Shown: positions 910-25,700 of the stretch, piece by piece
Position numbering within the stretch: the stretch's first letter is position 1
Layout: every line of letters starts with the position of its first letter
Assembly (NCBI GenBank): GCA_002269645.1
Contig: NIVC01000132.1
Coordinates: forward strand, 372,001 to 436,000
Reading direction: 5' to 3'
Length of the DNA stretch: 64,000 nt
DNA from: Macrostomum lignano
Lineage: Eukaryota
The notes under the pieces: generated by a model
The model's database searches: none
Told to the model about the DNA's origin: nothing
The model's input: only the letters and a program-made list of their open reading frames with translations
Translations under genes and position numbers: made by a program

Positions 910-3240
910 CTAAGCTTTCTCTTTCGGAGCTTTGCTAATCTTAGCCTTCTTGTTAGCTGGGGTTAGTGGCAGAGGCGGCGGCGGTAGAGGCACAGATGTG
1001 GCAGATGCTGCTGGTCGAGATGCCCCTCGTTTTTGTCCTGCTGGAGGTGCAGCTGAATCTTCCTGCTCAACCTCAGACAAGAGGCGTTTAGCGTGAGCCA
1101 TATATTCCATGGCTAGCTTTCGCTTCGTAGCAAGCTTCTGCGCCTTTGCCTTGTCAGCCTCCACTTTCTTTTGGGCTCTCTCGACTTGAGCAGCCTTTTC
1201 CTTTTCAGCAACTGCAGCAGCAGCTGCTGCTTCTGCCTCCTTCTCCTGTTGCTCGTGCACCTTTAAATACCTCTTGTACGCAACACTCGACTGCCGGGCA
1301 CATTCACGCATGGCTTCCTTTATTACAATCGACTCGCTGGTAATGCTGCAAGCAGCGCAGAAGGTTTGAACGGTCATTATGCCGTTAAGCGATGGATCCT
1401 GCAGCCGGTTGCGGTCCTTTCGCAAAATTCGACTCAGTTTGCTAAATTGACGCTCAATGTCGGCATTTCCATGAGGCAGGATCAGTGTTTTTCGAGCGAG
1501 TTCTGCCAGAATCGGATAATCACCTGAAGCCTGCAATTTGTCCCACAGCAGCTCGACGCGTCGAGGCTCGTCCTTCAGTTGCTCAGTGACTGGCAGCTGC
1601 TTCTGCAGCCGAATCGCCGCCACTCCAAACGCAGTGCATCAGCATCCTGCGTGTTGAGTACATGCAGCCGGCGCGCCATGTAACACAGCTGCTGTTCAGT
1701 AATAGTAGCAGCCTCGGTTAAAAACGGGTTGGCAAAGGCTGCAGCTTGAATAATTCTCAGCTTAAGCGGCAAGTAGTGGAACAATGCTGCCAACAGTGTC
1801 GAGTAGAACAGGCGTACTCGGTTGTAAAATAACGAACGCTGGAAGTTCGTCACTGTCTCGGATGTCAGAACTTTGCGAGCGACTTCGCCGATGATGAGCT
1901 CTCGATCAGGTAGCTGCTGCGAACGCTCCGCGTTAGCTAAATCCTGCAGCTGTTCTGCAGCTTCTATACACTGCTTCCGAAGAAAACAGCTTGCCACAGA
2001 CGCCATTAGAGCAGAGATTTCACTGAAGACATCAAATATGAGTGGTTCTGACGCCTAAAAGAGCTTCTCAAAACGCTGCAGTGGAGTCAAAGCTGAGCTA
2101 ACAAATCCTAGGTACGCCAGTGTTTCAGGCGCTTCCAGGCGCTGTAGAATTCGCTGGACCTTAGGGTTCTTTTTCTCGACTTCAGGAAGACGACGAAAAA
2201 TACTTTTAATGAGTCGTTCAGTTGAATGTGGCGATTCACACAAGAACGCAGCCATCTTGTCTCCACACGTCTAAGAATTCGCAATGGTGATTTCTGGAGC
2301 ATTTCTTGCATCCAACGGAAATTATCGGCAGCCTTGGCATAGCGTAGATAGTTGTACGTGTCATCCAGAAGCTCCTCAACATCTCCTAACTGAACTACTG
2401 CACGCTGTGCAGAGTTATGCACATCGTGCAGTATGCAGCCTCCAACATCGACCAAGTTTGGTGCCGCATCTTTCAGACGCTCAACAAGACTGCCAATGTT
2501 GCCACGCATTACAGAGGCGCTGTCTGACATTACCGCCAAGCAGTGACTAGGTTGCAAGTTTCGATGGCCGAGCTCTCCAAAACAATGTCTTTCAGAGCCT
2601 CGGCTGAGGCACCTGATCTTGCAGTAAAGCGCAGGAAAAGGAAATCGGTGATGACACGTCCATCTGCTAGATGACGGATCATGGCTGCCAACCACTTCCG
2701 ATCACCAATGCTTCCTTCGTCTAGAAGCAATGAATAGCAATGATTGTCGTAAAGTTCTTTCAATACTTCTTTCTAGAAATGAGCGCTCACTCCGAAATTG
2801 AGGAGATACGTCATCTTTTGTTTCGCAATGGAGAGCTCCTCAGTGGTTTTGCAGTCCGGAAGCATCTTTTTTAGTGTCTTTGGCATGGAATCAGCTAAGC
2901 GAAAAGGCAAATCATGCTCTGCAAACATGATTGCCAACTGAATTTCGGCATCAGTGGTCTTCTTTGACGCCTCGTCGGAACTTTTCGTAGCAGAAAAACA
3001 GAAATTTAACTTTTTACAGTTCCGAATGGAACCCACTTTGGACCGGTGCATTTGCGTTGTCAAATGTTCTTTGAGCCTTGTAATGCCTCCAGATTTGATG
3101 GAGATAGTTTTGTCACACATAGTGCACTCCACAGAGCCAGATCCATTGGCATCTTGGATGCTGGCGTAGGATTCCTTCCAAGTAGTGCAGCATGATTGGT
3201 CCTCGACCTCGACCTCAGGAATACGGTGAGTAGATGTCAT
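910..3240 (-). pseudogene. Degenerate hAT-superfamily transposase
   Basis: Consecutive minus-strand ORF pieces carry a BED-like zinc finger (CTMCDKTISIKSGGITRLKEHLTTQMH), LLLDEGS (first catalytic D), SDSASVMRG, GCILH (CxxH), RVETRW and the C-terminal LPHGNADIERQFS dimerisation motif. In-frame TAG stops lie at 2773-2775 and 2055-2057, with frameshifts near 2545, 2200 and 1620. Confidence 0.9.
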
Positions 3241-3346
3241 GCTGCTAGTGCAGAGTGCTGCTTTCTTTCAGATTAGTTATTTGCTGCTGCTGAAATTGGA
3301 TAATTAAAGGCCATATAGTATTGTATCTTTTGTCAGCGGCAAAAAA

Positions 3347-3406
3347 TTTCCGCGCTGCGCGGCAGTTTGGGATTTTCCGCGCTTCCGCGCAGCGTTGAAC
3401 ACGCTG
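3347..3406 (-). mobile_element. Probable 5' terminus of the hAT element with subterminal repeats
   Basis: The minus strand reads CAGCGTGTTCAACGCTG from 3406, a CAG start typical of hAT TIRs. TTCCGCGC occurs three times just inside it. The partner TIR was not found in the window. Confidence 0.55.
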
Positions 3407-3855
3407 GTTCTAGATGATGGATGAACTATATTCTTAGTGAAATCAGTAAAAAAACAATAAAAAGATCAAAAGCATATAACAATGTTTCTAGTCTTAAAAG
3501 TATCTAAAATAATAAATAAAGAAAAATATGACTTTAAACTAGCATAAATATTGATAGATTAACAACTTTACCTGTTAAGATTAGAACATGCTTATTGGTC
3601 TATCTATACTGTAGCTGAACTAGCCACAGAATTTTCATTGAATTTCCTATGACTGTTCTGCTAACTCCAATATTTTACTGATATTTCTTTAATTAGAAAA
3701 AGCATATAATGTAATATATTTTAATATACACAGTATCTTATTATTGTATTATAGTTTATAATCATTGTGTGCCAACAGTACTTAGCTAATTAGTTCATCT
3801 GTGTGGCCTGGGATCAAAAAGTTCAGAATAAACTTGAGCAAATCACTACTTGCAG

Positions 3856-6527
3856 TGGTCGGCACTCAGACGAATTTTACCAGCGGCGCAGCAGCCCACC
3901 TTGGCTCTGCCGCTGCCCCGGCTCCGCCTGGCCCAGGCCCTGTGCACGCAGCCATCAGGCGACGGTGAAGGCGTCGGCACAGGCAGGAACAAGCGTCTCG
4001 GCTCGCGCAATCCACCAGTAAAGTACGCGCAGTACACGCCGAGAACGCTGGACGAGAGCCTGCGCTACATGGCTAGCGCAGCCTACAAGGAGGTCTACGG
4101 CGAGCGGCCGGTCTGGTTCCACTATAGGCGCAATCTGCGCGGCTCCTTTGAAGCGTCTAAGCCGCGGCAGCGCTGTTTCAATACCGAGGGCGTCTACATC
4201 CGGGCCAATCCCTGTCCCCTGTGCAGGTCAGTCAGTACTGCGGTGATGGTGCAGGCGGCTGGCTGGCTGCCATTCCAAAATAATCCTTAAGAATCGCCCA
4301 GCCAGTTCATCCTCCTTAAGAATCGCCCAGCCAGTTCGGCATCCTTAAGAATCGCCCAGCCAGTTCGGCCTCATTAAGAATCTCCCAGCCAGTTCATCCT
4401 CATTAGGAATCGCCCAGCCAGTTCATCCTCATTAGGAATCGCCCAGCCAGTTCGGCCTCATTAAGAATCTCCCAGCCAGTTCATCCTCATTAAGAATCGC
4501 CCAGCCAGTTCATCCTCATTAGGAATCGCCCAGCCAGTTCATCCTCATTAGGAATCGCCCAGCCAGTTCGGCCTCATTAGGAATCGCCCAGCCAGTTCAT
4601 CCTCATTAGGAATCGCCCAGCCAGTTCATCCTCCTTAAGAATCGCCCAGCGAGTTCATCCTCATTAAGAATCGCCCAGCCAGTTCATCCTCCTTAAGAAT
4701 CGCCCAGCCAGTTCATCCTCATTAAAAATCGCCCAGCCAGTTCATCCTCATTAAGAATCGCCCAGCCAGTTCATCCTCATTAAGAATCGCCCAGCCAGTT
4801 CATCCTCATTAAAAATCGCCCAGCCAGTTCATCCTCATTAAGAATCGCCCAGCCAGTTCATCCTCTTTAAGAATCGCCCAGCCAGTTCATCCTCTTTAAG
4901 AATCGCCCAGCCAGTTCATCCTTCTTAAGAATCGCCCAGCCAGTTCGGCCTCCTTAAGAATCGCCCAGCCAGTTCGGCCTCCTTAAGAATCGCCCAGCCA
5001 GTTCATCCTCCTTAAGAATCGCCCAGCCAGTTCGGCCTCCTTAAGAATCGCCCAGCCAGTTCATCCTCCTTAAGAATCGCCCAGCCAGTTCGGCCTCCTT
5101 AAGAATCGCCCAGCCAGTTCGGCCTCCTTAAGAATCGCCCAGCCAGTTCGGCCTCCTTAAGAATCGCCCAGCCAGTTCATCCTCATTAAGAATCGCCCAG
5201 CCAGTTCATCCTCATTAGGAATCGCCCAGCCAGTTAATCCTCCTTAAGAATCGCCCAGCCAGTTCATCCTCCTTAAGAATCGCCCAGCCAGTTCATCCTC
5301 CTTAAGAATCGCCCAGCCAGTTCATCCTCATTAGGAATCGCCCAGCCAGTTAATCCTCCTTAAGAATCGCCCAGCCAGTTAATCCTCATTAAGAATCGCC
5401 CAGCCAGTTCATCCTTAAGAATCGCCCAGCCAGTTCGGCCTCCTTAAGAATCGCCCAGCCAGTTCGGCCTCATTAAGAATCTCCCAGCCAGTTCATCCTC
5501 ATTAGGAATCGCCCAGCCAGTTAATCCTCCTTAAGAATCGCCCAGCCAGTTAATCCTCATTAAGAATCGCCCAGCCAGTTCATCCTCCTTAAGAATCGCC
5601 CAGCCAGTTCGGCCTCCTTAAGAATCTCCCAGCCAGTTCATCCTCATTAATAATCGCCCAGCCAGTTCATCCTCCTTAAGAATCGCCCAGCCAGTTCATC
5701 CTCATTAAGAATCGCCCAGCCAGTTCATCCTCCTTAAGAATCGCCCAGCCAGTTCATCCTCCTTAAGAATCGCCCAGCCAGTTCATCCTCATTAAGAATC
5801 GCCCAGCTAGTTCACCCTCATTAAGAATCGCCCAGCCAGTTCATCCTCATTAGGAATCGCCCAGCCAGTTCATCCTCATAGGAATCGCCCAGCCAGTTCA
5901 TCCTCATTAAGAATCGCCCAGCCAGTTCATCCTCATTAAGAATCGCCCAGCCAGTTCATCCTCCTTAAGAATCGCCCAGCGAGTTCATCCTCCTTAAGAA
6001 TCGCCCAGCCAGTTCGGCCTCCAATTAAGGCCGCCCACCCTGCCCAATTCAGAGACGAGTACCTCGTGCTGGACTATCGCCACAGCGACCTGCTAGTGCA
6101 GTTCCTGGACCCGCAGTCGGGCCTGCTGCTGGGCGTAGGCAAGGTGCAAGTGTGCAAGCACCAATACGATAAGCTGCAACTCGAGGTTGAGAAGGCATTC
6201 GACTCCGGCTACTTGGAAGCGCCTGTGCCGTTTCGCTTCTACGACTACAGCCTGTACAGCGGCGGCCGGCCCCTGCCAGCTGACCCGTTCGGCGACTACG
6301 CCTCGGGTACCAGCCTGCCGCACGCACAGGAGCTTTTGATCGAGCCGCCTCTGTTGGACATTCAACGGCCAAAGATGCCGGACCGGTACGCTATGGAGGT
6401 TGGCATGCAGCAGAGGCTGCGCAAAAAGTACAAAGGCAAACCGACGCGACCGCAGTTCAGCACCGCTATTGATGAATACCTGGACAAGCAGATTGACGAG
6501 GGCGGCTTGCAAAAGCGTCAGACTTAA
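3856..6527 (+). CDS. MRPS18B: Mitochondrial ribosomal protein S18b (mS40); exons 3856-4226 and 6053-6527
   Basis: The spliced product reads ...WFHYRRNLRGSFEASKPRQRCFNTEGVYIRANPCPLCR|DEYLVLDYRHSDLLVQFLDPQSGLLLGVGKVQVCKHQYDKLQLEVEKAFDSGYL, matching the S18b pattern (YRRN..., NPCPxCRD, ...VCxxQ...A.D.G.L). Donor AG|GTCAGT at 4227 and acceptor TTCAG|A at 6052 are phase 2 compatible. There is no in-frame ATG before codon 74 of the open frame. Confidence 0.92.
4287..6021. repeat. 28-bp minisatellite filling the MRPS18B intron (about 60 copies)
   Basis: Unit TTAAGAATCGCCCAGCCAGTTCATCCTC(A/C), with variants such as TTAGG and TTCGGC. Confidence 0.97.
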
Positions 6528-6662: not shown

Positions 6663-7852
6663 AGGCATATATTCTCTAATAATGATTTTTTAACGCCGAG
6701 AGCCGCATCAGACTGAGCCATTCATATAGGCAGAAAGAGAGCAGTAGTAGTGTAATTATTATGTATAGTTCATATTATATTGTTTTTATTGTGAAAAAAC
6801 CACTAGCTCACGCGCTAACAGACAAAGGAGAGCACATGTTATAATATTAGTAGATAATTAAAGCTTGGTTGCTTGCGGTTGGTTGGTTAAACACGCAGGG
6901 ACCCAAGACCACCCGGATGCGTAGAGAAAGAACCAAGTCACCCTTGGTCAGTTGTTTGACAAGTGTCGCATCTAAACAAATATAAGCCGGGGCGCGGGGG
7001 TCACCTGAGGTAATGAATGAGACAAAGCTAAGCAGTCATTGGCGATTGGGAGGGTATAGAAAATAACAACAGATACAATGGCTTAGCATCATCATAAACG
7101 GTATAAACCTTTATCTAGAGGAGCACTGGGTGACAAGGTCATGCTGAGACATGCGTGAGCAAAAGAGAGTTCTACTTGGGGCGAGTAGTGCAGGCGGGAC
7201 ATTGTTCAAACTGAACTGGGGAAAGGGGTCACTGCGATAAATTCTCGCCACGTGGAAAAGTGGACTGCAAGCCGTCTTTATGAAGCAAACACGTATAAAA
7301 AATGAATCTTGAAGATTCGGCGTCAACTTTGGACATGTCTAGAGATAGATATACGCTCGTATTGAAGATATGCAAACAAGCTAAAATGTTACCAATCCTA
7401 GGCTAGGCAACAAAGACAGCGGTGAACATAAGCCATTAAATGATTGGTTATAACTGCCCGCAGGCGCCAGAGGGAGCCAGTTAAACCATTAAGCCTGGTA
7501 ATGGTATGAAAAGCAAACAAATCAAAATTGAAAAAAGCAAATCCACAAAGACAAATTTAACTGACAGAGTGGACAGGAACTGCCGATGCCCTATTTACAT
7601 CTTCTTTTTACTAAGTTCCAGTCTAGTGCTGCCATCCGCTCCGCCAATATCGAAAGATGAATGAGACAGAAGAGATAGATGTGAAAGTAAAGAGAATTTC
7701 GACCGACATTAGTGAATACCTCGTAAATAACAAGGAAAACATGGAAGCGAAGGAAGAACTACTAATGCCTAATTGATTTTTATTAGTAAATAAAATGAAG
7801 AGTACACTTCTAGATTTGTAATCTGAGTCTGATGATTTAGGAGACTGTGGCA

Positions 7853-8292
7853 GTGGACACGCAACTGAGGATCTGGGAGGGTGGCGGTGGCCCAGCAACT
7901 GAGGATCTGGGAGGGTGGCGGTGGCCCAGCAACTGAGGATCTGGGAGGGTGGCAGTGGACACGCAACTGAGGATCTGGGAGGGTGGCGGTGGCCCAGCAA
8001 CTGAGGATCTGGGAGGGTGGCGGTGGCCCAGCAACTGAGGATCTGGGAGGGTGGCGATGGCCCAGCAACTGAAGATCTGGGAGCGTGGCGGTGGCCCAGC
8101 AACTGAGGATCTGGGAGGGTGGCGGTGGCCCAGCAACTGAGGATCTGGGAGGGTGGCGGTGGCCAAGAAACTGAGGATCTGGGAGCGTGGCGGTGGCCTA
8201 GCAACTGAAGATCTGGGAGCGTGGCGGTGGCCAAGAAACTGAGGATCTGGGAGGGTGGCAGTGGCCCAGCAACTGAGGATCTGGCAGGGTGG
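7853..8292. repeat. 34-bp G-rich minisatellite
   Basis: Unit GCAACTGAGGATCTGGGAGGGTGGCGGTGGCCCA, about 13 copies. Confidence 0.95.
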
Positions 8293-8515
8293 CAGCTGTT
8301 CAGCCTGAAGATGTGGCGCACACTGAAGATCTAGATCCTAGTGTACATCGAAATCCCAACCAATTCAGAAGCAGTTGCTAAATCTCATTCTCGGCAGCAC
8401 AGGTACTACAGAGCACGAGATCATACTCGTATTAGATTACAACACTGTAAAATCGGAGTAAAACTAGGAAATCAAATGGCCACCATTAACAGCGGCCTCC
8501 ACTGTTAAGCGGCAG

Positions 8516-11500
8516 TCACGTGCTGAGCAGTTTCTCAAGCAAGCCGTTGGACACTCGGCTCGGGGCTGCCACCGACTCCACCGACTCCTCTTCATCCTCT
8601 TCGTCTTCTTTGGACCGACCGTTGACCCCCCTAGCTGAGGTCGTGGCCGCTTCCCTCTGGTCCTCCATGGCCAGGATTGTGTCAACAACATCCTGCGGCA
8701 GCTCGGGCGGCCCAGCCAGCCGGACATTTGGCGGCACAGGCAGCTCTTTCATTTGGGCGGCGAATCCGCGACTGCTGCCGATGCCAAAGTTCGGCAGCTG
8801 GAATGCGGCTCCGGCGAGCTGCACCGGTGGCGTGCCAAGCTTCGGCGGCGTCACGGCGCCGTTGCTGATGTCGCCGCCGTTTTGCCGTTTCCCATTGATG
8901 GTCGGCACGCCGCTGCCGCCGCCGTCGCAGGTGTCGAGCAGGTCGAGAAGCACAGAGTCACTGCTGACTGTCCGACTGACAGGCTGGGGCGCCCGCGACC
9001 GCTGCTGCGCACCAGTCTGCTCGGTGGCGCCTCCGCCGCTGTGGGAGTAGGGATTGATGTCATTATCATGGGGAATTGGATTAGTGGCGGACCAGTTATC
9101 ATGGGGATTTGGGATTAGTGGCGGAACAGTTAGGATATGGATTTGAATTACTGGCGGACCAGTTATCATGTAGATTTGAGTTAATGACGGAGCAGTTATT
9201 ATGGGGTTTTGAATTAATGACGGATCAGTTATTATGGGGATTTGAATTAGTGGCGGACCAGTTACCATGTGGATTTGAATTAGTGGCGGACCAGTTAAGA
9301 TGGGGATTTGGGATTAATGGCGGACAAGTTATGGGAATTTAGGATTAGTGGCGTCTACTAAACTGACCAAATTCACCAGCCCGAAACTCACCCAACAATA
9401 CTGTGCGTGCTGGTCAGCAGGTTAGGGCCGGTCAGCTGGCTGCAGGTTTTCACGTAGGCAACACGGCCGGGTGCCACCTGACAGCGATAAATTGAGCTGG
9501 CCGGCCGGCCGGAGCTGCTCACTGCGAATTAAATGGGCGCAGTTTAGAGTTGCGCAGTGATGGAGTGGGCATGGGAAAGAAGTTGACGGATTGGCATAGA
9601 GTGAACATTAATAAGGAGACAGGTGAGCGAGAAATAGATAGGTGTGCAAAGATTAAAGAGACATGGGAGTGAGGAAAGAGAGGTGAGTGAGGAAAGAGAC
9701 AGGTGAGTGAGCAAGGAGACAGGTGAGTGAGCAAGGAGACAAGTGAGTGAGGAAAGAGACAGGTGAGTGAGGAAAGAGACAGGTGAGTGAGCAAGGAGAC
9801 AGGTGCGTGAGCAAGGAGACAGGTGAGTGAGCAAGGAGACAGGTGCGTGAGCAAGGAGACAGGTGAGTGAGCAAGGAGACAGGTGAGTGAGCAAGGAGAC
9901 AGGTGAGTGAGGAAAGAGACAGGTGAGTGAGCAAGGAGACAAGTGAGTGAGCAGAGGCATGTGAGTGAGGAAAGAGACAGATGAGTGAGGAGACAGACAG
10001 GTAGGTGAGGAGACAGACAGGTAAGTGAGGAGACAGACAGGTAGGTGAGGAGACAGACAGGTAAGTGAGGAGACAGACAGGTAGGTGAGGAGTCCTTACC
10101 AGCCGTGTCCAAATGCCTTTGCCAGATGGGCCGGTCGGACTGCGCCACCAGTTGGCCCCATTGTTTGCCGAGAAAGTATTCGCCAAGGATGCCTAGGCTG
10201 GCCGTTAGCTCAGGACTGTGGCGTGGTTAACAGCGGGAGTCCATGTTAATTCTAGCATCACATCGATTACAGCTTTAAGTGTCAATTCCATTCTATCTAC
10301 AAAACTTATTTCTGTAGGTTCAATCAAAAGTGATTAATGGTTTTGACTTTTTCCTAGGGTCTTTGTTGATGAACAACTGCTCAAACTGAGGATCTGAGAG
10401 TGGGTGAATGACTGCTCAAACTGAGGATCTGGGAGTGGGTGAATGAATGCTCAAACTGAGGATCTGGGAGTGGGTGAATGACTGCTCAAACTGAGGATCT
10501 GGGAGTGGGTGAATGAATGCTCAAACTGAGGATCTGGGAGTGGGTGAATGAATGCTCAAACTGAGGATCTGGGAGTGGGCGAATGACTGCTCAAACTGAG
10601 GATCTGGGAGTGGGTGAATGACTGCTCAAACTGAGGATCTGGGAGTGGGTGAATGACTGCTCAAACTGAGGATCTGGGAGTGGTTGAATGAATGCTCAAA
10701 CTGAGGATCTGGGAGTGGGTGAATGAATGCTCAAACTGAGGATCTGGGAGATGGTGAATGACTGCTGAAACTGAGGATCTGGGAGATGGTGAATGACTGC
10801 TCAAACTGAGGATCTGAGAGTGGGTGAACTTTTTCACCTATGGGTGAATTTAGGATTCATTTAACAGACTTTATTAAAGCCAGACGGGGTGGGGGGTTAA
10901 TGAATCTGAGCCGGTAAGGTTGAAAGTTAAAAATCTGCTATACGTCATGCTAATTGGCCTATGCACTGGCATACTGGATACTGAAGAGCGATAAAATTAC
11001 TGTAAAAGCTGTAGCATTTGGGTTTGGCCAAACACATACTACTGATAATACTACTGATATAAAATTATTGAATAGATATTGACTGACAAGAGCGCCAGTG
11101 ACAATCCATAATAAAAACCTACCTCAGACGTACCAGCCGCAATAGAGGCTTGCTTTATACATAAAAATCTAAATAAGTTATAAAAAACACATACTAATGA
11201 ACGATTGAGTCTAACAGATTCAAATAACGCGGACAGAACACGATTGTGAATTGTTGTAAGTAAGATGCGCGCACAGACCTGCAAGCAGATCGCAGCACAG
11301 TTGAATCTGGCAAGTTGAGCTCGCAAACCAGAGTGGGAGTTGGCCGTTTCTGCTGCGACTGCAGAGAAAATCCTGCGACTGGCAACTGGGCTGGCAGGCT
11401 GGGCGGCCGCCGCACGGGCTCAGGCTGCGGGGCCGCGGCCGGGCGACAGACGCAAACTAGGGCTGGCTCCAGACAGCCTGCGGGGGTGCGCGATCCACTG

Positions 11501-12749
11501 CTTTAGGGGATTCATTGCAGTGCCAGGGGCTGGCGGCGGGGGTCTGAGGATCTGGGAAGGTAGCGGTGGTGGCCCAGCAACTGAGGATCTGGGAGGGTGG
11601 CGGTGGGGGCCCAGCAACTGAGGATCTGGGAGGGTAGCGGCGGGGGCCCAGCAACTGAGGATCTGGGAGGGTAGCGGTGGGGGCCCAGCAACTGAGGATC
11701 TGGGAAGGTAGCGGTGGTGGCCCAGCAACTGAGGATCTGGGAGGGTGGCGGTGGGGGCCCAGCAACTGAGGATCTGGGAGGGTGGCGGTGGGGGCCCAGC
11801 AACTGAGGATCTGGGAGGGTAGCGGTGGGGGCCCAGCAACTGAGAATCTGGGAGGGTGGCGGTGGGGGCCCAGCAACTGAGGATCTGGGAGGGTAGCGGT
11901 GGGGGCCCAGCAACTGAGAATCTGGGAGGGTGGCGGTGGGGGCCCAGCAACTGAGAATCTGGGAGGGTGGCCGTGGTGGCCCAGCAACTGAGAATCTGGG
12001 AGGGTGGCGGTGGGGGCCCAGCAACTGAGGATCTGGGAGGGTAGCGGTGGGGGCCCAGCAACTGAGAATCTGGGAGGGTTAGAAGCCGAGGTTGAAAGTG
12101 TGGGGCACGAAATTTTAAGGTCCAACCCAAACAGATTAGGCGAGACGAAAGAGAAAAACTTGTATAGAGAAGTGCGACAACAGCAGATCAATTCTGAATG
12201 AGCTGTGAGCATTCTTAACCGCTTGTACAAGGATTGCATAAAGAAGGTCAACCAAAACTAAGCAGCACTGACCCTCGCTGAACGGGAACTGCTGCAGTTT
12301 AACGATGGCCTCTACATTGGCGGTAACAGAAGACCCGCCGGAGATTTCTACATCCAGACGGAAGCGCAACTGGCTTGGCAAGGTCCGCTTTACCAGTGAT
12401 GAACCTGAAGTGGATAAAAATTCAATTTATGTACTACTATAAGTACAGCAAATACGTATATGAAAGCAGTTTCAAATAAAATTGAGAGCTACTCACTGCT
12501 GAGCTGTTCTAAGTAGGGTTTAAGTAAACTCCGATCGTCCCTATACAGCAGCGAGACAATGGGCCTCTGCCGCAGCTGTTCAGCGGTGCAGTCGAGATAC
12601 TTAGACAGATTGGGCGACGCGTAAGCAACCACAGCGGCACGGTTAGCAACCAGGAGGAAGCTGTCGACTAAGTCCAGTACGAGAGCGGCCAGACGCTCTC
12701 CAGGGTCATAATAGGCGGCCAGATTGCCGTCTGGTGCGGCGGTGCTCAT
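8516..12749 (-). CDS. PAS-A/PAS-B protein with C-terminal LxxLL motifs (p160/NCOA/taiman-like); exons 12749-12497, 12404-12273, 11477-11279, 10197-10100, 9521-9392, 9038-8516; 444 aa
   Basis: All five GT-AG introns are phase compatible (1,1,2,1,2). PAS-A-like segment: DSFLLVANRAAVVAYASPNLSKYLDCTAEQLRQRPIVSLLYRDD...ALVCVCRP. PAS-B/PAC-like segment: LGILGEYFLGKQWGQLVAQSDRPIWQRH...SIYRCQVAPGRVAYVKT...LTSTHSIV. The low-complexity tail has LLDLL and LEKLL. Upstream exons may exist (acceptor-like CACAG at 12784-12786). Confidence 0.75.
9065..9352. repeat. About 33-bp degenerate intronic minisatellite
   Basis: Unit approximately GGGATTTGAATTAGTGGCGGACCAGTTATCATG, about 9 copies. Confidence 0.85.
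9655..10092. repeat. 20-bp intronic minisatellite (two subtypes)
   Basis: GAGACAGGTGAGTGAGCAAG/GAAA units, followed by GAGACAGACAGGTA(A/G)GTGAG units. Confidence 0.95.
10375..10826. repeat. 35-bp intronic minisatellite
   Basis: Unit CTCAAACTGAGGATCTGGGAGTGGGTGAATGA(C/A)TG, about 13 copies. Confidence 0.95.
11545..12079. repeat. 37-bp G-rich intronic minisatellite
   Basis: Unit GCAACTGAGGATCTGGGAGGGT(G/A)GCGGTGGGGGCCCA, about 14 copies, related to the array at 7853-8292. Confidence 0.95.
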
Positions 12750-22795: not shown

Positions 22796-25700
22796 ATGAT
22801 GAAATTTCGCGAGCCCGACAGGGCCTCGGAATTAAACACGGAGCATCGAGTGACACCGGAGAGTCAATGGTCCGATAGTGTAAGTCAGGAAAATTGCACA
22901 ATGAGAGTAGTGCAGACGGAAAAGCATAGATACGAGTGCACCCTCACTTTCAGAGCCACATAGAGCACAAGATGTCCAGCGAGCTGTTTGTTGGCGAAGG
23001 TGTCGTAGCCAAAGGCATTCTGCACGGACAGTAGTAAGTAGATTTGTTATACTTGTTTGTTGTTTTACTTTTCAAGCCACTTTTTCTTACACACTCCATA
23101 GAAACCGCTAGACCGTAGCAGTCAATGCCCACTGTTTTCTTTTCAGCCTCAATGTCACCCTCTCAGCCGAAAACTGGCAGTTAGAATCTATAAACATTAG
23201 CTTGAGCAGCAACGGCCAGTTTGAGATCAGTTATCGAAGCAAAGGCAAGCAGACAGACAGGCGCGGAAGACTCAGCGAAGTGATTGTAACGCCGTACTCA
23301 TTTGTCATCAAAGTTGCCGTGCAACCGCTCGGCTACGATGTGAGTTAGCCAAAATGATTTCATAGCTATCTATATGATATGTTTTTCAAAATTATTTTGA
23401 CATCTATTTACGCCAGAAAAGACAGAAAAATGCGTTTGATGTCTATCTTAACCTGTAATACGAGCGTAATACTGTAACTACTGAGTAGCGTCCGAATCAC
23501 ACTAAATCAAGAACACAAACTTATTTTTAGCGCAAGTCTTACCCTATTGGTTTGAGCCTCAAACAACCAATGTTTAGCTGTTTGTTTGATTTTTTGCGAT
23601 TTCACCACAGGAAATTGTCACTACCAGCGATTGGGGACAGGTATAAATAGTCGTAGAATTAATTGAACCATTGACGGAACAGTCATGAAATAATTTTCTG
23701 GCTTTGAGTTGAGTACTCAAACCTGAGGGAAGATTGAAGTTTCATCAAGAGTAATGCTGCTTTCACAATCAAGCGATTTCGGTCTGGTTCTGCTTCAGCA
23801 GGTTGGCACGTTCGAAAAAAAATATTGTGGCATTCCCAGATGTAAACCTGACAGTTTCGAACGCTTCACCCGGTCCCGTTCGGGGAAAAGTCCTAAACTG
23901 GACAGGAACCGTTTCATTGTGAATGCAGACTAACTGTTGTGGACAGTGGGTGAACAATCACATCAAGGACCACTAGAAATTACTGTATGGACCTCTGTAG
24001 ATTCTCGGAATAAACCGGAGCAGATACAAGTACCTGATGTACTTCGCCGAATAAAGTGTTACAATACGTTGCAATTGCAATATTGATACGATAAATCTGG
24101 CTTCAAAATATTCTAATCAAAGAGACGATCATTTGAATCAGCAAGTAGTCTGAGAGCGCACCATAGAAATGTGATTAATTTTTTAGATAAGCCTACAAGA
24201 AAAGCACCTGGCGGAGCTCAGCCACAACGGGAACTACTCGGCAATCTGCACCGTTATACTGGGCGGAGAGGCCGACTTCACCGAGCTGGAGATTTGCGAC
24301 TCCGAAGAGCCAAAAGTTGCCACAGAACCGGAGAACCCGTATTTGAATGTCCAACTCGGTGAGCTTCTGCCATGCTGTTATCAATTTTAATAATCTTCAC
24401 GCTTAACGTATAGACAATTCTATGCGCCAAATTACAGTACATTCGGCAAGGCAACTCGGCACGCCGAGTCACGTCAAGCGACTCCGCCTCTCACTGCCTA
24501 GAGTTGAGAACTCAATCTGGAAGCCGATCCCCATTTTCAGCGAAGAAAGCGAATGCGAACTCAAAAATGACGATAGACTGAACCACGAAATCTCGCATGG
24601 CAGTGTTCAAACGATGCCGAAATCGGATCTTGATGCCGAGAATGCAAGGCTACGACGATGTCAACGTAGGAACGCAGACACGGCCTACATCAAACCAAGC
24701 TCAAACTTCAGCAGCGTGGTAGAATTTGAGCCGGTAGATTCGAAAACTTCCATTGAGCCGAAATTTTCAACAGCTTTGTACAAACGAGACACGCATCAAA
24801 CAGTTAACGTTAATGAAGCCAACGCGAAAGCTCAGGAGAACGTCAGGAAAACGTCAGCAAACAACGTAGGTAAAGACGTCATTGAGTCTGCCTGGTTGGA
24901 ATTAGACGATCCAGCAAAGGAAGGGATTGAGACAGTCATGTTGCGAACTGGCAGAGAAATCGTATCCAAAGCATATGACGACGACAACAAGATTGAAACT
25001 GGTGTAGAAACATCCCTCATCAAGAATTTTCAAAGAAAAAACGAAACTATGAGTATCCAAATCGGCACCTATGAATGTCTCGCAGTGACAGTTGACGAGC
25101 GTCCAAGCAAAGAAGAAATACGATTATTTAAATATGAGCAGCAACGCAGTAAATCCCCAAAACTTAGGCGAAAACATAAAAGCCATCTCAGCCACAGCAG
25201 AACCCTATCATCGATCAAATCTATGATGAAATTCTCAAAACTTCATCAATTACAGCAAAAACGACCCCAAAACAAAGACGACAAATCCAGTGGATTGCCA
25301 TCGACAACGCTATTGAATCACACCGAAGACACCACGTCTATTCGAAAGCAGCAGCAAGGCACTGATGCTGAGCAGCGCGATGAGTCCATTGGAGCAGAAG
25401 TCGACGACATAAAGAGCTTGGTGATGCACCTCGACCAGGACGTCGATGAGGTCCGGATCGAGTACGAGGACCAACAGGTTTCGATGGAATTGCCGGAGCC
25501 TCCGATCCGAGAGCTTCGTCACGAAAGCCAGTCAGCCGATCTCGCTGAAGAGACCGAGGAAAGCGTGCTTGCTCGAAAGCTGCAGCAGGGTACTGATGCT
25601 GAGCAGCGCGATGAGTCCATTGGAGCAGAAGTCGACGACAAAAATAGCTTGGTGATGCACCTCGACCAGGACGTCGATGAGGTCCGAATCGAGTACGAGG

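What the first reader, a model, noticed from the sequence alone, without database searches (positions are those of the whole stretch)
3835..4071. MRPS18B has no genomic start codon; a spliced-leader AUG would supply it exactly in frame
Seen: an in-frame TGA at 3835-3837, an acceptor-like TTGCAG ending at 3855, then TGG TCG GCA CTC AGA CGA... The first in-frame ATG is at 4069. The skipped segment WSALRRILPAAQQPTLALPLPRLRLAQALC is Arg/Leu/Ala-rich and acid-free, like a mitochondrial presequence. I found no convincing upstream cis exon in the AT-rich 5' flank. Established: flatworm spliced leaders end in AUG, which can act as the initiator. Inference: trans-splicing creates M-W-S-A-L-R-R..., making mitochondrial import of this protein dependent on SL addition.
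Basis: partly seen in the sequence, partly recalled or inferred. Interest (0 to 1): 0.7.

Follow-up and report, generated by a model that had tools for sequence, protein, structure and literature searches.

The report
Spliced-leader AUG starts flatworm MRPS18B
In the flatworm Macrostomum lignano the gene for mitochondrial ribosomal protein mS40 (MRPS18B) has no start codon of its own and almost certainly borrows the AUG at the end of the trans-spliced leader, a trick already documented in flatworms, so this is a clean but ordinary example.

Summary
The window is Macrostomum lignano Mlig_3_7 contig NIVC01000132.1. An in-frame TGA lies at 3835-3837. TTGCAG at 3850-3855 matches the species' trans-splice acceptor motif [T/C]TNCAG. 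The mS40/MRPS18B reading frame opens at TGG 3856, and there is no ATG in any frame until 4069.

The 71 codons before that ATG are coding:
- GC jumps from 0.32 to 0.66 exactly at 3856, with GC3 of 0.75.
- Three genomic copies differ 3.3% upstream but 0-1 synonymous sites in exon 1.
- Similarity to solved mS40 structures begins before Met73.

No upstream ATG exon with a consensus donor exists. GenBank's CDS (PAA89895.1, "partial") starts at base 3856. That is what the annotation pipeline yields when it trims the leader and cuts transcripts at trans-splice sites. The M. lignano leader ends ...TTGCATG, so joining gives M-W-S-A-L-R-R in frame.

I could not reach any M. lignano RNA read, so the junction itself is inferred. 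The mechanism is known: Cheng et al. 2006 described it in Schistosoma, and Macrostomum annotators have noted it. S. mansoni and two trematode-like orthologue transcripts carry their own ATG, so the dependence is lineage-specific.

This is a new member of a known kind, of low to moderate interest.

The parts
3241..3855 (+). AT-rich 5' flank, the presumed outron and promoter region. It is removed by trans-splicing. It contains the in-frame TGA at 3835-3837.
   Evidence: GC is 0.32. There is no GT[AG]AG donor here and only two [TC]TNCAG motifs, one of them the acceptor. Copies L001 and L002 differ at 20 of 608 sites plus 16 gap columns.
3850..3855 (+). TTGCAG, the SL trans-splice acceptor.
   Evidence: It matches the [T/C]TNCAG motif enriched at M. 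lignano trans-splice sites (PMC8629364). It is identical in all three genomic copies. The GenBank CDS begins at the next base.
3856..4068 (+). Start of exon 1: 71 codons with no ATG in any frame. They encode a presequence-like N-terminus and the first conserved residues of mature mS40.
   Evidence: GC is 0.66 and GC3 is 0.75, like the rest of the CDS. L001 and L002 show 0 differences here against about 7 expected at the upstream rate; the only change (in L003) is a synonymous third position. PDB mS40 alignments start at residues 58-67, before Met73. The first 36 residues are acid-free, and the first 30 carry net charge +4.
4069..4226 (+). Rest of exon 1, starting at the first genomic ATG (Met73, an internal residue) and running to the GT donor at 4227.
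   Evidence: YMASAAY is also internal in orthologue P0003, which has its own upstream Met. The donor reads cag|GTCAGT.
4227..6052 (+). Intron 1 (GT..AG, phase 2), filled by a 29-bp x60 minisatellite at 4284-6022.
   Evidence: Intron length is 1826, 1105 and 815 nt in the three copies.
6053..6527 (+). Exon 2: the S18 domain and C-terminal extension, ending in a TAA stop at 6525-6527.
   Evidence: The spliced translation is a continuous 281 aa identical to PAA89895.1. Pfam Ribosomal_S18 scores 18 bits, below the 21-bit cutoff.

Best explanation
The primary transcript of the M. lignano mS40 (MRPS18B) gene is trans-spliced at the TTGCAG acceptor ending at 3855. The spliced leader (...CAATTTATTGCAUG) is joined directly to UGG at 3856. 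The leader's terminal AUG becomes codon 1 of a 282-aa precursor, M-W-S-A-L-R-R-I-L-P... Its first ~36 residues are a genome-encoded, basic, acid-free mitochondrial presequence. The genome therefore encodes every residue except the initiator Met. Without leader addition there is no AUG before Met73, which lies inside the conserved mature protein. What is shown here: the sequence anatomy, the coding signature, the conservation, the frame, the acceptor motif, and the 5'-partial annotation. What is inferred: the SL-exon junction in RNA, initiation at the SL AUG, and mitochondrial import through this presequence.
For: The organism and contig were identified. The SL ends in ATG. The SL plus exon translates as MWSALRR... 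in frame, and the SL holds a single ATG. The acceptor equals the published trans-splice motif. There is an in-frame TGA 21 nt upstream and no ATG in any frame from 3710 to 4068. GC and GC3 step up exactly at 3856. There is no upstream ATG exon with a consensus donor. In the three paralogous copies, exon 1 shows 1 mismatch in 371 nt in two of the pairwise comparisons and 2 in the third, and both variable sites are synonymous. The flank, by contrast, shows 20 mismatches in 608 nt plus indels. The Mlig_3_7 pipeline trims the SL, cuts transcripts at SL peaks and calls ORFs with TransDecoder (PMC5730564). The resulting CDSs PAA89895.1, PAA88547.1 and PAA89868.1 are all 'partial' and begin 0, 3 and 6 nt after the acceptor, never upstream. 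UniProt models from a different assembly also lack a Met and begin LQWSAL. mS40 similarity begins before Met73. The N-terminus has presequence-like properties. As precedent, the SL AUG is in frame in 28% of S. mansoni trans-spliced mRNAs and more than 40 cDNAs need it (Cheng et al. 2006, as cited in PMC9851317). [quoted passage not shown]
Against: No M. lignano RNA read, cDNA or SL track could be examined. Two of the three annotated copies start 3 and 6 nt inside the exon rather than exactly at the acceptor, so the annotation is not base-perfect evidence. The SL AUG has a weak Kozak context by the vertebrate rule (U at -3 and U at +4; sequence, rule from my own knowledge). The presequence was scored only with simple heuristics, not TargetP or MitoFates. 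Orthologues in S. mansoni and two trematode-like species use their own AUG, so there is no comparative support for SL-AUG use by this particular gene.
Confidence: 0.85

Rival explanations
1. Translation starts at a near-cognate (non-AUG) codon. This could be TTG 3850 on a non-trans-spliced RNA, or an in-frame TTG, CTG or ACG inside exon 1 (3901, 3907, 3913, 3928, 3940, 3946).
For: In-frame near-cognate codons exist. The ORF listing reports a TTG-initiated ORF 3850-4290.
Against: TTG 3850 is part of the acceptor and would be removed by trans-splicing. Starts at 3901 or later would remove the most amphiphilic, basic part of the presequence. A perfectly in-frame AUG is delivered by the leader in a species where 30-39% of genes are trans-spliced.
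Confidence: 0.04
2. An undetected cis-spliced 5' exon supplies the ATG. It would lie further upstream, use a non-consensus donor, or sit beyond the window start.
For: Weak-donor candidates exist (ATG 3421...|GTTTCT; ATG 3482...|GTATCT). RNA data were not inspected directly.
Against: No ATG ORF ends in phase 0 at a GT[AG]AG donor in the 3.85 kb upstream. The upstream 3.2 kb is occupied by minus-strand hAT/BED transposase remnants. Three RNA-seq-guided gene models and two UniProt models from another assembly contain no such exon.
Confidence: 0.05
3. The genomic ATG at 4069 (Met73) is the real start. The upstream open frame would be 5' UTR, and the protein would be imported without a cleavable presequence.
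For: It is the first genomic AUG, it has G at +4, and it is in frame.
Against: The 213 nt before it show coding GC3 and paralogue constraint. mS40 alignments begin 6-15 residues upstream of it. The same Met is internal in orthologue P0003, and the position is Phe in S. mansoni. All orthologues inspected have long N-terminal extensions. It may still serve as a minor leaky-scanning start.
Confidence: 0.05
4. The start codon was lost through an assembly or sequencing error.
For: The assembly is PacBio-based and the genome is repeat-rich.
Against: Three separately assembled copies have the same ...cttgcagTGGTCGGCACTC.... The independent assembly behind the UniProt models gives the same reading, LQWSAL.
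Confidence: 0.01

Closest known systems
SL 3'-terminal AUG used as initiator methionine in flatworms (Cheng, Cohen, Ndegwa & Davis 2006, J Biol Chem 281:733; 'slORFs' of PMC9851317)
   Same: The leader ends in AUG. The acceptor lies directly at the first sense codon. The SL AUG is in frame, and no genomic AUG lies upstream of the conserved protein. The gene model appears 5'-partial when the SL is trimmed.
   Different: That work was done in Schistosoma mansoni with cDNA and translation assays. Here the species is the free-living Macrostomum lignano, and the RNA junction and the initiation event are inferred. The S. mansoni orthologue of this very gene has its own 5' UTR and AUG.
mS40 / MRPS18B of the mammalian mitoribosome small subunit (PDB 5aj3 chain p, 3j9m chain AO)
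   Same: The core is conserved (PVW..YRRN, NPCPxCRDE), with E=3e-22 over residues 66-193. It has an N-terminal extension ahead of the mature part.
   Different: Identity to the nearest flatworm orthologues is 35-38%. It has a long flatworm-type C-terminal extension. The Pfam S18 score of 18 bits is below the 21-bit gathering cutoff. The initiator Met is not encoded in the gene.
Trans-spliced mS40 mRNAs of trematode-like species (Logan contigs L012, with a Fasciola-type SL, and L013)
   Same: It is the same gene family, and the mRNA 5' end carries a flatworm SL ending in GCATG.
   Different: There the SL AUG is out of frame and opens a short uORF of 17 or 13 codons. The protein starts at its own genomic AUG about 50-120 nt downstream.
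[quoted passage not shown] 2003, listed in the references of PMC12582326)
   Same: It is a flatworm case in which trans-splicing determines whether an N-terminal mitochondrial signal is made.
   Different: In that case alternative mRNAs give two isoforms; the paper was not read here. For mS40 only one productive mRNA form is predicted.

Membership tests
mS40 / MRPS18B (mitochondrial ribosomal protein S18b) | Ribosomal_S18 domain (Pfam PF01084) | tested here: inconclusive
   The window protein scores 18 bits (E=0.0033) against a gathering cutoff of 21. Its orthologues in the profile search all carry PF01084.
mS40 / MRPS18B (mitochondrial ribosomal protein S18b) | Best similarity to S18b rather than to the S18a or S18c paralogues | tested here: met
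   All 7 PDB hits are 28S ribosomal protein S18b/mS40, with E from 3e-22 to 3e-20. The nearest named relatives are 'Small ribosomal subunit protein mS40'.
mS40 / MRPS18B (mitochondrial ribosomal protein S18b) | N-terminal mitochondrial targeting presequence | tested here: inconclusive
   Simple heuristics agree: 36 acid-free residues, net charge +4 in the first 30, 56% A/L/S/R, and a maximum helical hydrophobic moment of 0.68. No dedicated predictor (TargetP, MitoFates) was available.
SL-AUG-initiated flatworm mRNAs (Cheng et al. 2006) | The organism's spliced leader ends in AUG | tested here: met
   The M. lignano SL is CGGTCTCTTACTGCGAAGACTCAATTTATTGCATG (PMC8629364; PMC5173321).
SL-AUG-initiated flatworm mRNAs (Cheng et al. 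2006) | The mRNA is trans-spliced at an acceptor immediately 5' of the ORF | not testable with these tools
   Only indirect evidence is available: the acceptor motif match, no upstream donor, and 5'-partial RNA-seq-guided CDSs starting 0-6 nt after the acceptor. No SL-containing read could be inspected.
SL-AUG-initiated flatworm mRNAs (Cheng et al. 2006) | The SL AUG is in frame with the conserved ORF, with no intervening stop | tested here: met
   SL plus exon translates as MWSALRRILPAAQQPTLALPL... and continues into the 281-aa CDS.
SL-AUG-initiated flatworm mRNAs (Cheng et al. 2006) | No genomic in-frame AUG between the upstream stop and the conserved part of the protein | tested here: met
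   TGA is at 3835, the first ATG in any frame is at 4069, and similarity to mS40 starts upstream of it.
SL-AUG-initiated flatworm mRNAs (Cheng et al. 2006) | Translation actually initiates at the SL AUG | not testable with these tools
   This needs ribosome profiling, N-terminal proteomics or reporter assays.

The most novel reading that the evidence does not exclude
Because the SL AUG sits in a weak context and the next AUG in any frame is the in-frame Met73, leaky scanning could yield two products from one mRNA. One would be a mitochondrial precursor from the SL AUG. The other would be a presequence-less cytosolic or nuclear mS40 from Met73. The ratio between them, and mitoribosome biogenesis itself, would then be tied to trans-splicing activity, which is enriched among stem-cell (neoblast) genes in M. 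lignano. Extra-mitochondrial roles have been reported for human MRPS18B (from my own knowledge, not checked here).
Probability: 0.08. Interest if true: 0.55.

Novelty: new member of a known kind. Interest (0 to 1): 0.25.

Why it matters
This is a clear textbook-style case in which a nuclear gene for an essential mitochondrial protein is incomplete on its own. The initiator codon is supplied in trans, so translation of the targeting signal depends on RNA processing. In practice it explains why this gene, and probably many others in M. lignano, is deposited as 'partial' in GenBank and lacks a Met in UniProt. It also shows how to repair such models: prepend the Met when a trans-splice site abuts an open frame. 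For evolution, it shows that the dependence was gained or lost within flatworms, since the S. mansoni and two trematode-like orthologue transcripts keep their own AUG. It does not reveal a new mechanism.

Tried and rejected
- The 90% identity cluster of the protein holds only genome-derived models and no transcript-derived member.
- A scan of metagenome contigs for the 20-nt SL-exon junction gave 0 hits, as expected.
- Searches of the literature and supplements for Mlig007758, Mlig027301 and MRPS18B in the M. lignano papers found nothing gene-specific.
- Cheng et al. 2006 and Wasik et al. 2015 are not held in the library. Cheng et al. 2006 is cited only through other papers that describe it; Wasik et al. 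2015 is not used.
- No SL RNA gene or SL-like copy is in the window, so a cis 'leader' exon is excluded.
- BLASTP of the 71 pre-ATG residues alone against orthologue P0003 gave no alignment. The similarity upstream of Met73 is limited to about 6-15 residues in full-length alignments.
- I rejected the upstream cis exon, the ATG 4069 start, a non-AUG start and an assembly error as the main explanation (see rivals).

Full report
**What is in the sequence**

- TGA lies at 3835-3837, and TTGCAG at 3850-3855.
- The open frame TGG TCG GCA CTC AGA CGA... begins at 3856, in frame with the TGA.
- The next ATG in any frame is at 4069; the previous one is at 3709.
- Reading on, exon 1 ends at 4226 with donor cag|GTCAGT.
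- An 1826-nt intron (4227-6052) is almost entirely a 29-bp x60 minisatellite.
- Exon 2 runs from 6053 to the TAA at 6525-6527.
- The spliced frame gives 281 residues beginning with W.

**Organism and gene**

The spliced product is 100% identical to Macrostomum lignano proteins.
- The 90% identity cluster holds three GenBank entries, all flagged 'partial': PAA89895.1 (Mlig007758.g1), PAA88547.1 and PAA89868.1 (Mlig027301.g2 and g1). It also holds two UniProt entries that begin 'LQWSAL...' without a Met.
- The contig that encodes PAA89895.1 is NIVC01000132.1 of assembly Mlig_3_7. It is identical to the window over the sequence checked around the gene, so window 3856 corresponds to record position 375856.
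- The protein is mS40/MRPS18B. All PDB hits are 28S ribosomal protein S18b, with E from 3e-22 to 3e-20. The S. mansoni mS40 matches at E=6e-37. A profile search recovers mS40 from many flatworms, insects and molluscs.
- The Pfam S18 domain itself scores just under its cutoff, 18 against 21 bits.

**Is the stretch before the first ATG coding?**

Yes, on four counts.
1. Composition changes abruptly at the acceptor. GC is 0.32 in 3241-3855 and 0.66 in 3856-4068. GC3 there is 0.75, like the rest of the CDS at 0.77-0.79.
2. The three genomic copies show constraint.
   - L001 and L002 differ at 20 of 608 aligned sites plus 16 gap columns in the 616 nt upstream.
   - Exon 1 shows 1 mismatch in 371 nt in two of the pairwise comparisons and 2 in the third.
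   - Both variable sites in exon 1 are synonymous third positions.
   - At the upstream rate about 7 differences are expected in the 213 pre-ATG bases, and L001 versus L002 shows none (Poisson P about 0.0009).
3. HMMER alignments to mammalian mS40 start at residues 58-67, before Met73. The motif YMASAAY is internal in orthologue P0003, which has its own Met 75 residues earlier. In S. mansoni that position is Phe.
4. All flatworm orthologues inspected have long N-terminal extensions.

Met73 is therefore an internal residue, not the initiator.

**Where could the initiator come from?**

- On the + strand of the 3.85 kb upstream, no ATG-initiated ORF ends in phase 0 at the species' donor consensus GT[AG]AG.
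- The 615-nt AT-rich flank contains no GT[AG]AG at all. That fits the rule that an acceptor with no upstream donor is trans-spliced (as summarised in PMC8629364).
- Further upstream lie minus-strand hAT/BED transposase remnants.
- The window holds no leader-like sequence.
- M. lignano has one spliced leader, CGGTCTCTTACTGCGAAGACTCAATTTATTGCATG, carried by 30-39% of its genes.
- The motif enriched at its trans-splice acceptors is [T/C]TNCAG. TTGCAG at 3850-3855 fits it, and it is one of only two such motifs in the flank.
- Joining the leader to 3856 gives ...UUGCAUG|UGGUCG..., read as M-W-S-A-L-R-R in the conserved frame.

**Annotation as indirect RNA evidence**

- The Mlig_3_7 annotation was built from RNA-seq. 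Leader-containing reads were trimmed and mapped, transcripts were cut at the resulting trans-splice peaks (TBONE), and ORFs were called with TransDecoder (PMC5730564).
- A gene whose AUG lies in the trimmed leader must come out of that pipeline as a 5'-partial CDS beginning at the acceptor. PAA89895.1 does exactly that.
- The other two copies begin 3 and 6 nt further in. No model extends upstream or has an extra exon.
- The 0, 3 and 6 nt scatter means the annotation is not base-perfect proof, and I could not see the reads themselves.
No transcript-derived member is in the cluster. A junction scan of metagenomes was empty.

**The N-terminus**

With the added Met, the first 36 residues have no acidic residue. 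The first 30 carry net charge +4. The acid-free stretch is 56% A/L/S/R, and the amphiphilic peak (muH 0.68) lies at residues 4-14. This resembles or exceeds the orthologues' N-termini. These are heuristics only; no dedicated predictor was available.

**Comparison with known cases**

- Use of the flatworm leader's terminal AUG as the initiator Met was shown by Cheng et al. 2006. [quoted passage not shown] - So the mechanism is known, including in this genus. What is specific here is the gene.
- The orthologues differ. Seven S. mansoni transcript contigs have a genomic 5' UTR and their own AUG, with no leader.
- One trematode-like transcript (L012) starts with the last 23 nt of the Fasciola-type leader (matched to PMC3795323), and another (L013) starts ...ATAGTAGTGCATG. 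In both, the leader AUG opens a short uORF and the protein starts at its own AUG.
- Dependence on the leader AUG is therefore specific to the Macrostomum lineage, or was lost elsewhere.

**Verdict**

My confidence in the SL-AUG start is about 0.85.
- The rivals are a non-AUG start, a hidden cis exon, a Met73 start and an assembly error. Each is at 0.05 or below as the main explanation. Met73 could still be a minor leaky-scanning start, because no other AUG intervenes.
- Novelty: a new member of a known kind.
- Interest: low to moderate. Its main value is as a clean example and as a pointer for repairing the 'partial' gene models of this genome.

Noticed in passing
window 4284-6022: A 29-bp minisatellite (about 60 copies, 93% matches) fills intron 1 of the mS40 gene. 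The intron is 1826, 1105 and 815 nt in the three M. lignano copies (L001, L002, L003), so the array length differs markedly between recently duplicated copies.
   Followed up: partly
window 910-3240, minus strand: A run of overlapping minus-strand ORFs. The 5'-most (2773-3240) has a BED zinc finger (Pfam E=8.6e-6). It looks like a fragmented hAT-type transposase directly upstream of, and divergent from, the mS40 gene.
   Followed up: partly
window 24422-59504, plus strand: A giant reading frame made of about 150 tandem copies of a 231-bp (77-aa) highly acidic unit (...LRHESQSADLAEETEESVLARKLQQGTDAEQRDESIGAEVDD...). The first piece is an uninterrupted 4979-aa ORF starting with ATG at 24422. Later pieces are separated by frame breaks, which could be real or assembly indels.
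   Followed up: partly
window 7847-8293, 10376-10828, 11544-12079: Three related 34-37-bp minisatellites share the core CTGAGGATCTGGGAGG. They lie in the region of the neighbouring minus-strand gene (463-aa product; from window 8516 to beyond about 12527, the end of the fetched locus L001).
   Followed up: no
window 3336-3400: A GC-rich island with three copies of TTCCGCGC in the otherwise AT-rich flank, about 470-520 nt upstream of the acceptor. All three are kept in copy L003 and two of three in L002. It could be a promoter element or a transposon end.
   Followed up: partly
L012 1-140 and L013 1-61: mS40 transcripts of two trematode-like species begin with a flatworm spliced leader. L012 carries the last 23 nt of the Fasciola-type SL. 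In both, the SL AUG is out of frame and opens a 17- or 13-codon uORF ahead of the gene's own AUG.
   Followed up: yes
proteins P0009 (Schistosoma intercalatum) and P0021 (Taenia asiatica): These gene models fuse mS40 (PF01084) to a Ribosomal_L14 domain (PF00238). This suggests that mS40 and uL14m are adjacent, and perhaps form an operon, in parasitic flatworms.
   Followed up: no
proteins P0001 and P0007 (UniProt A0A1I8I1M8, A0A1I8GMM3): The UniRef name 'ERIC3 protein' attached to the M. lignano mS40 cluster looks like a mis-annotation. These models also read through the acceptor (LQ from TTG CAG) and lack a Met.
   Followed up: partly
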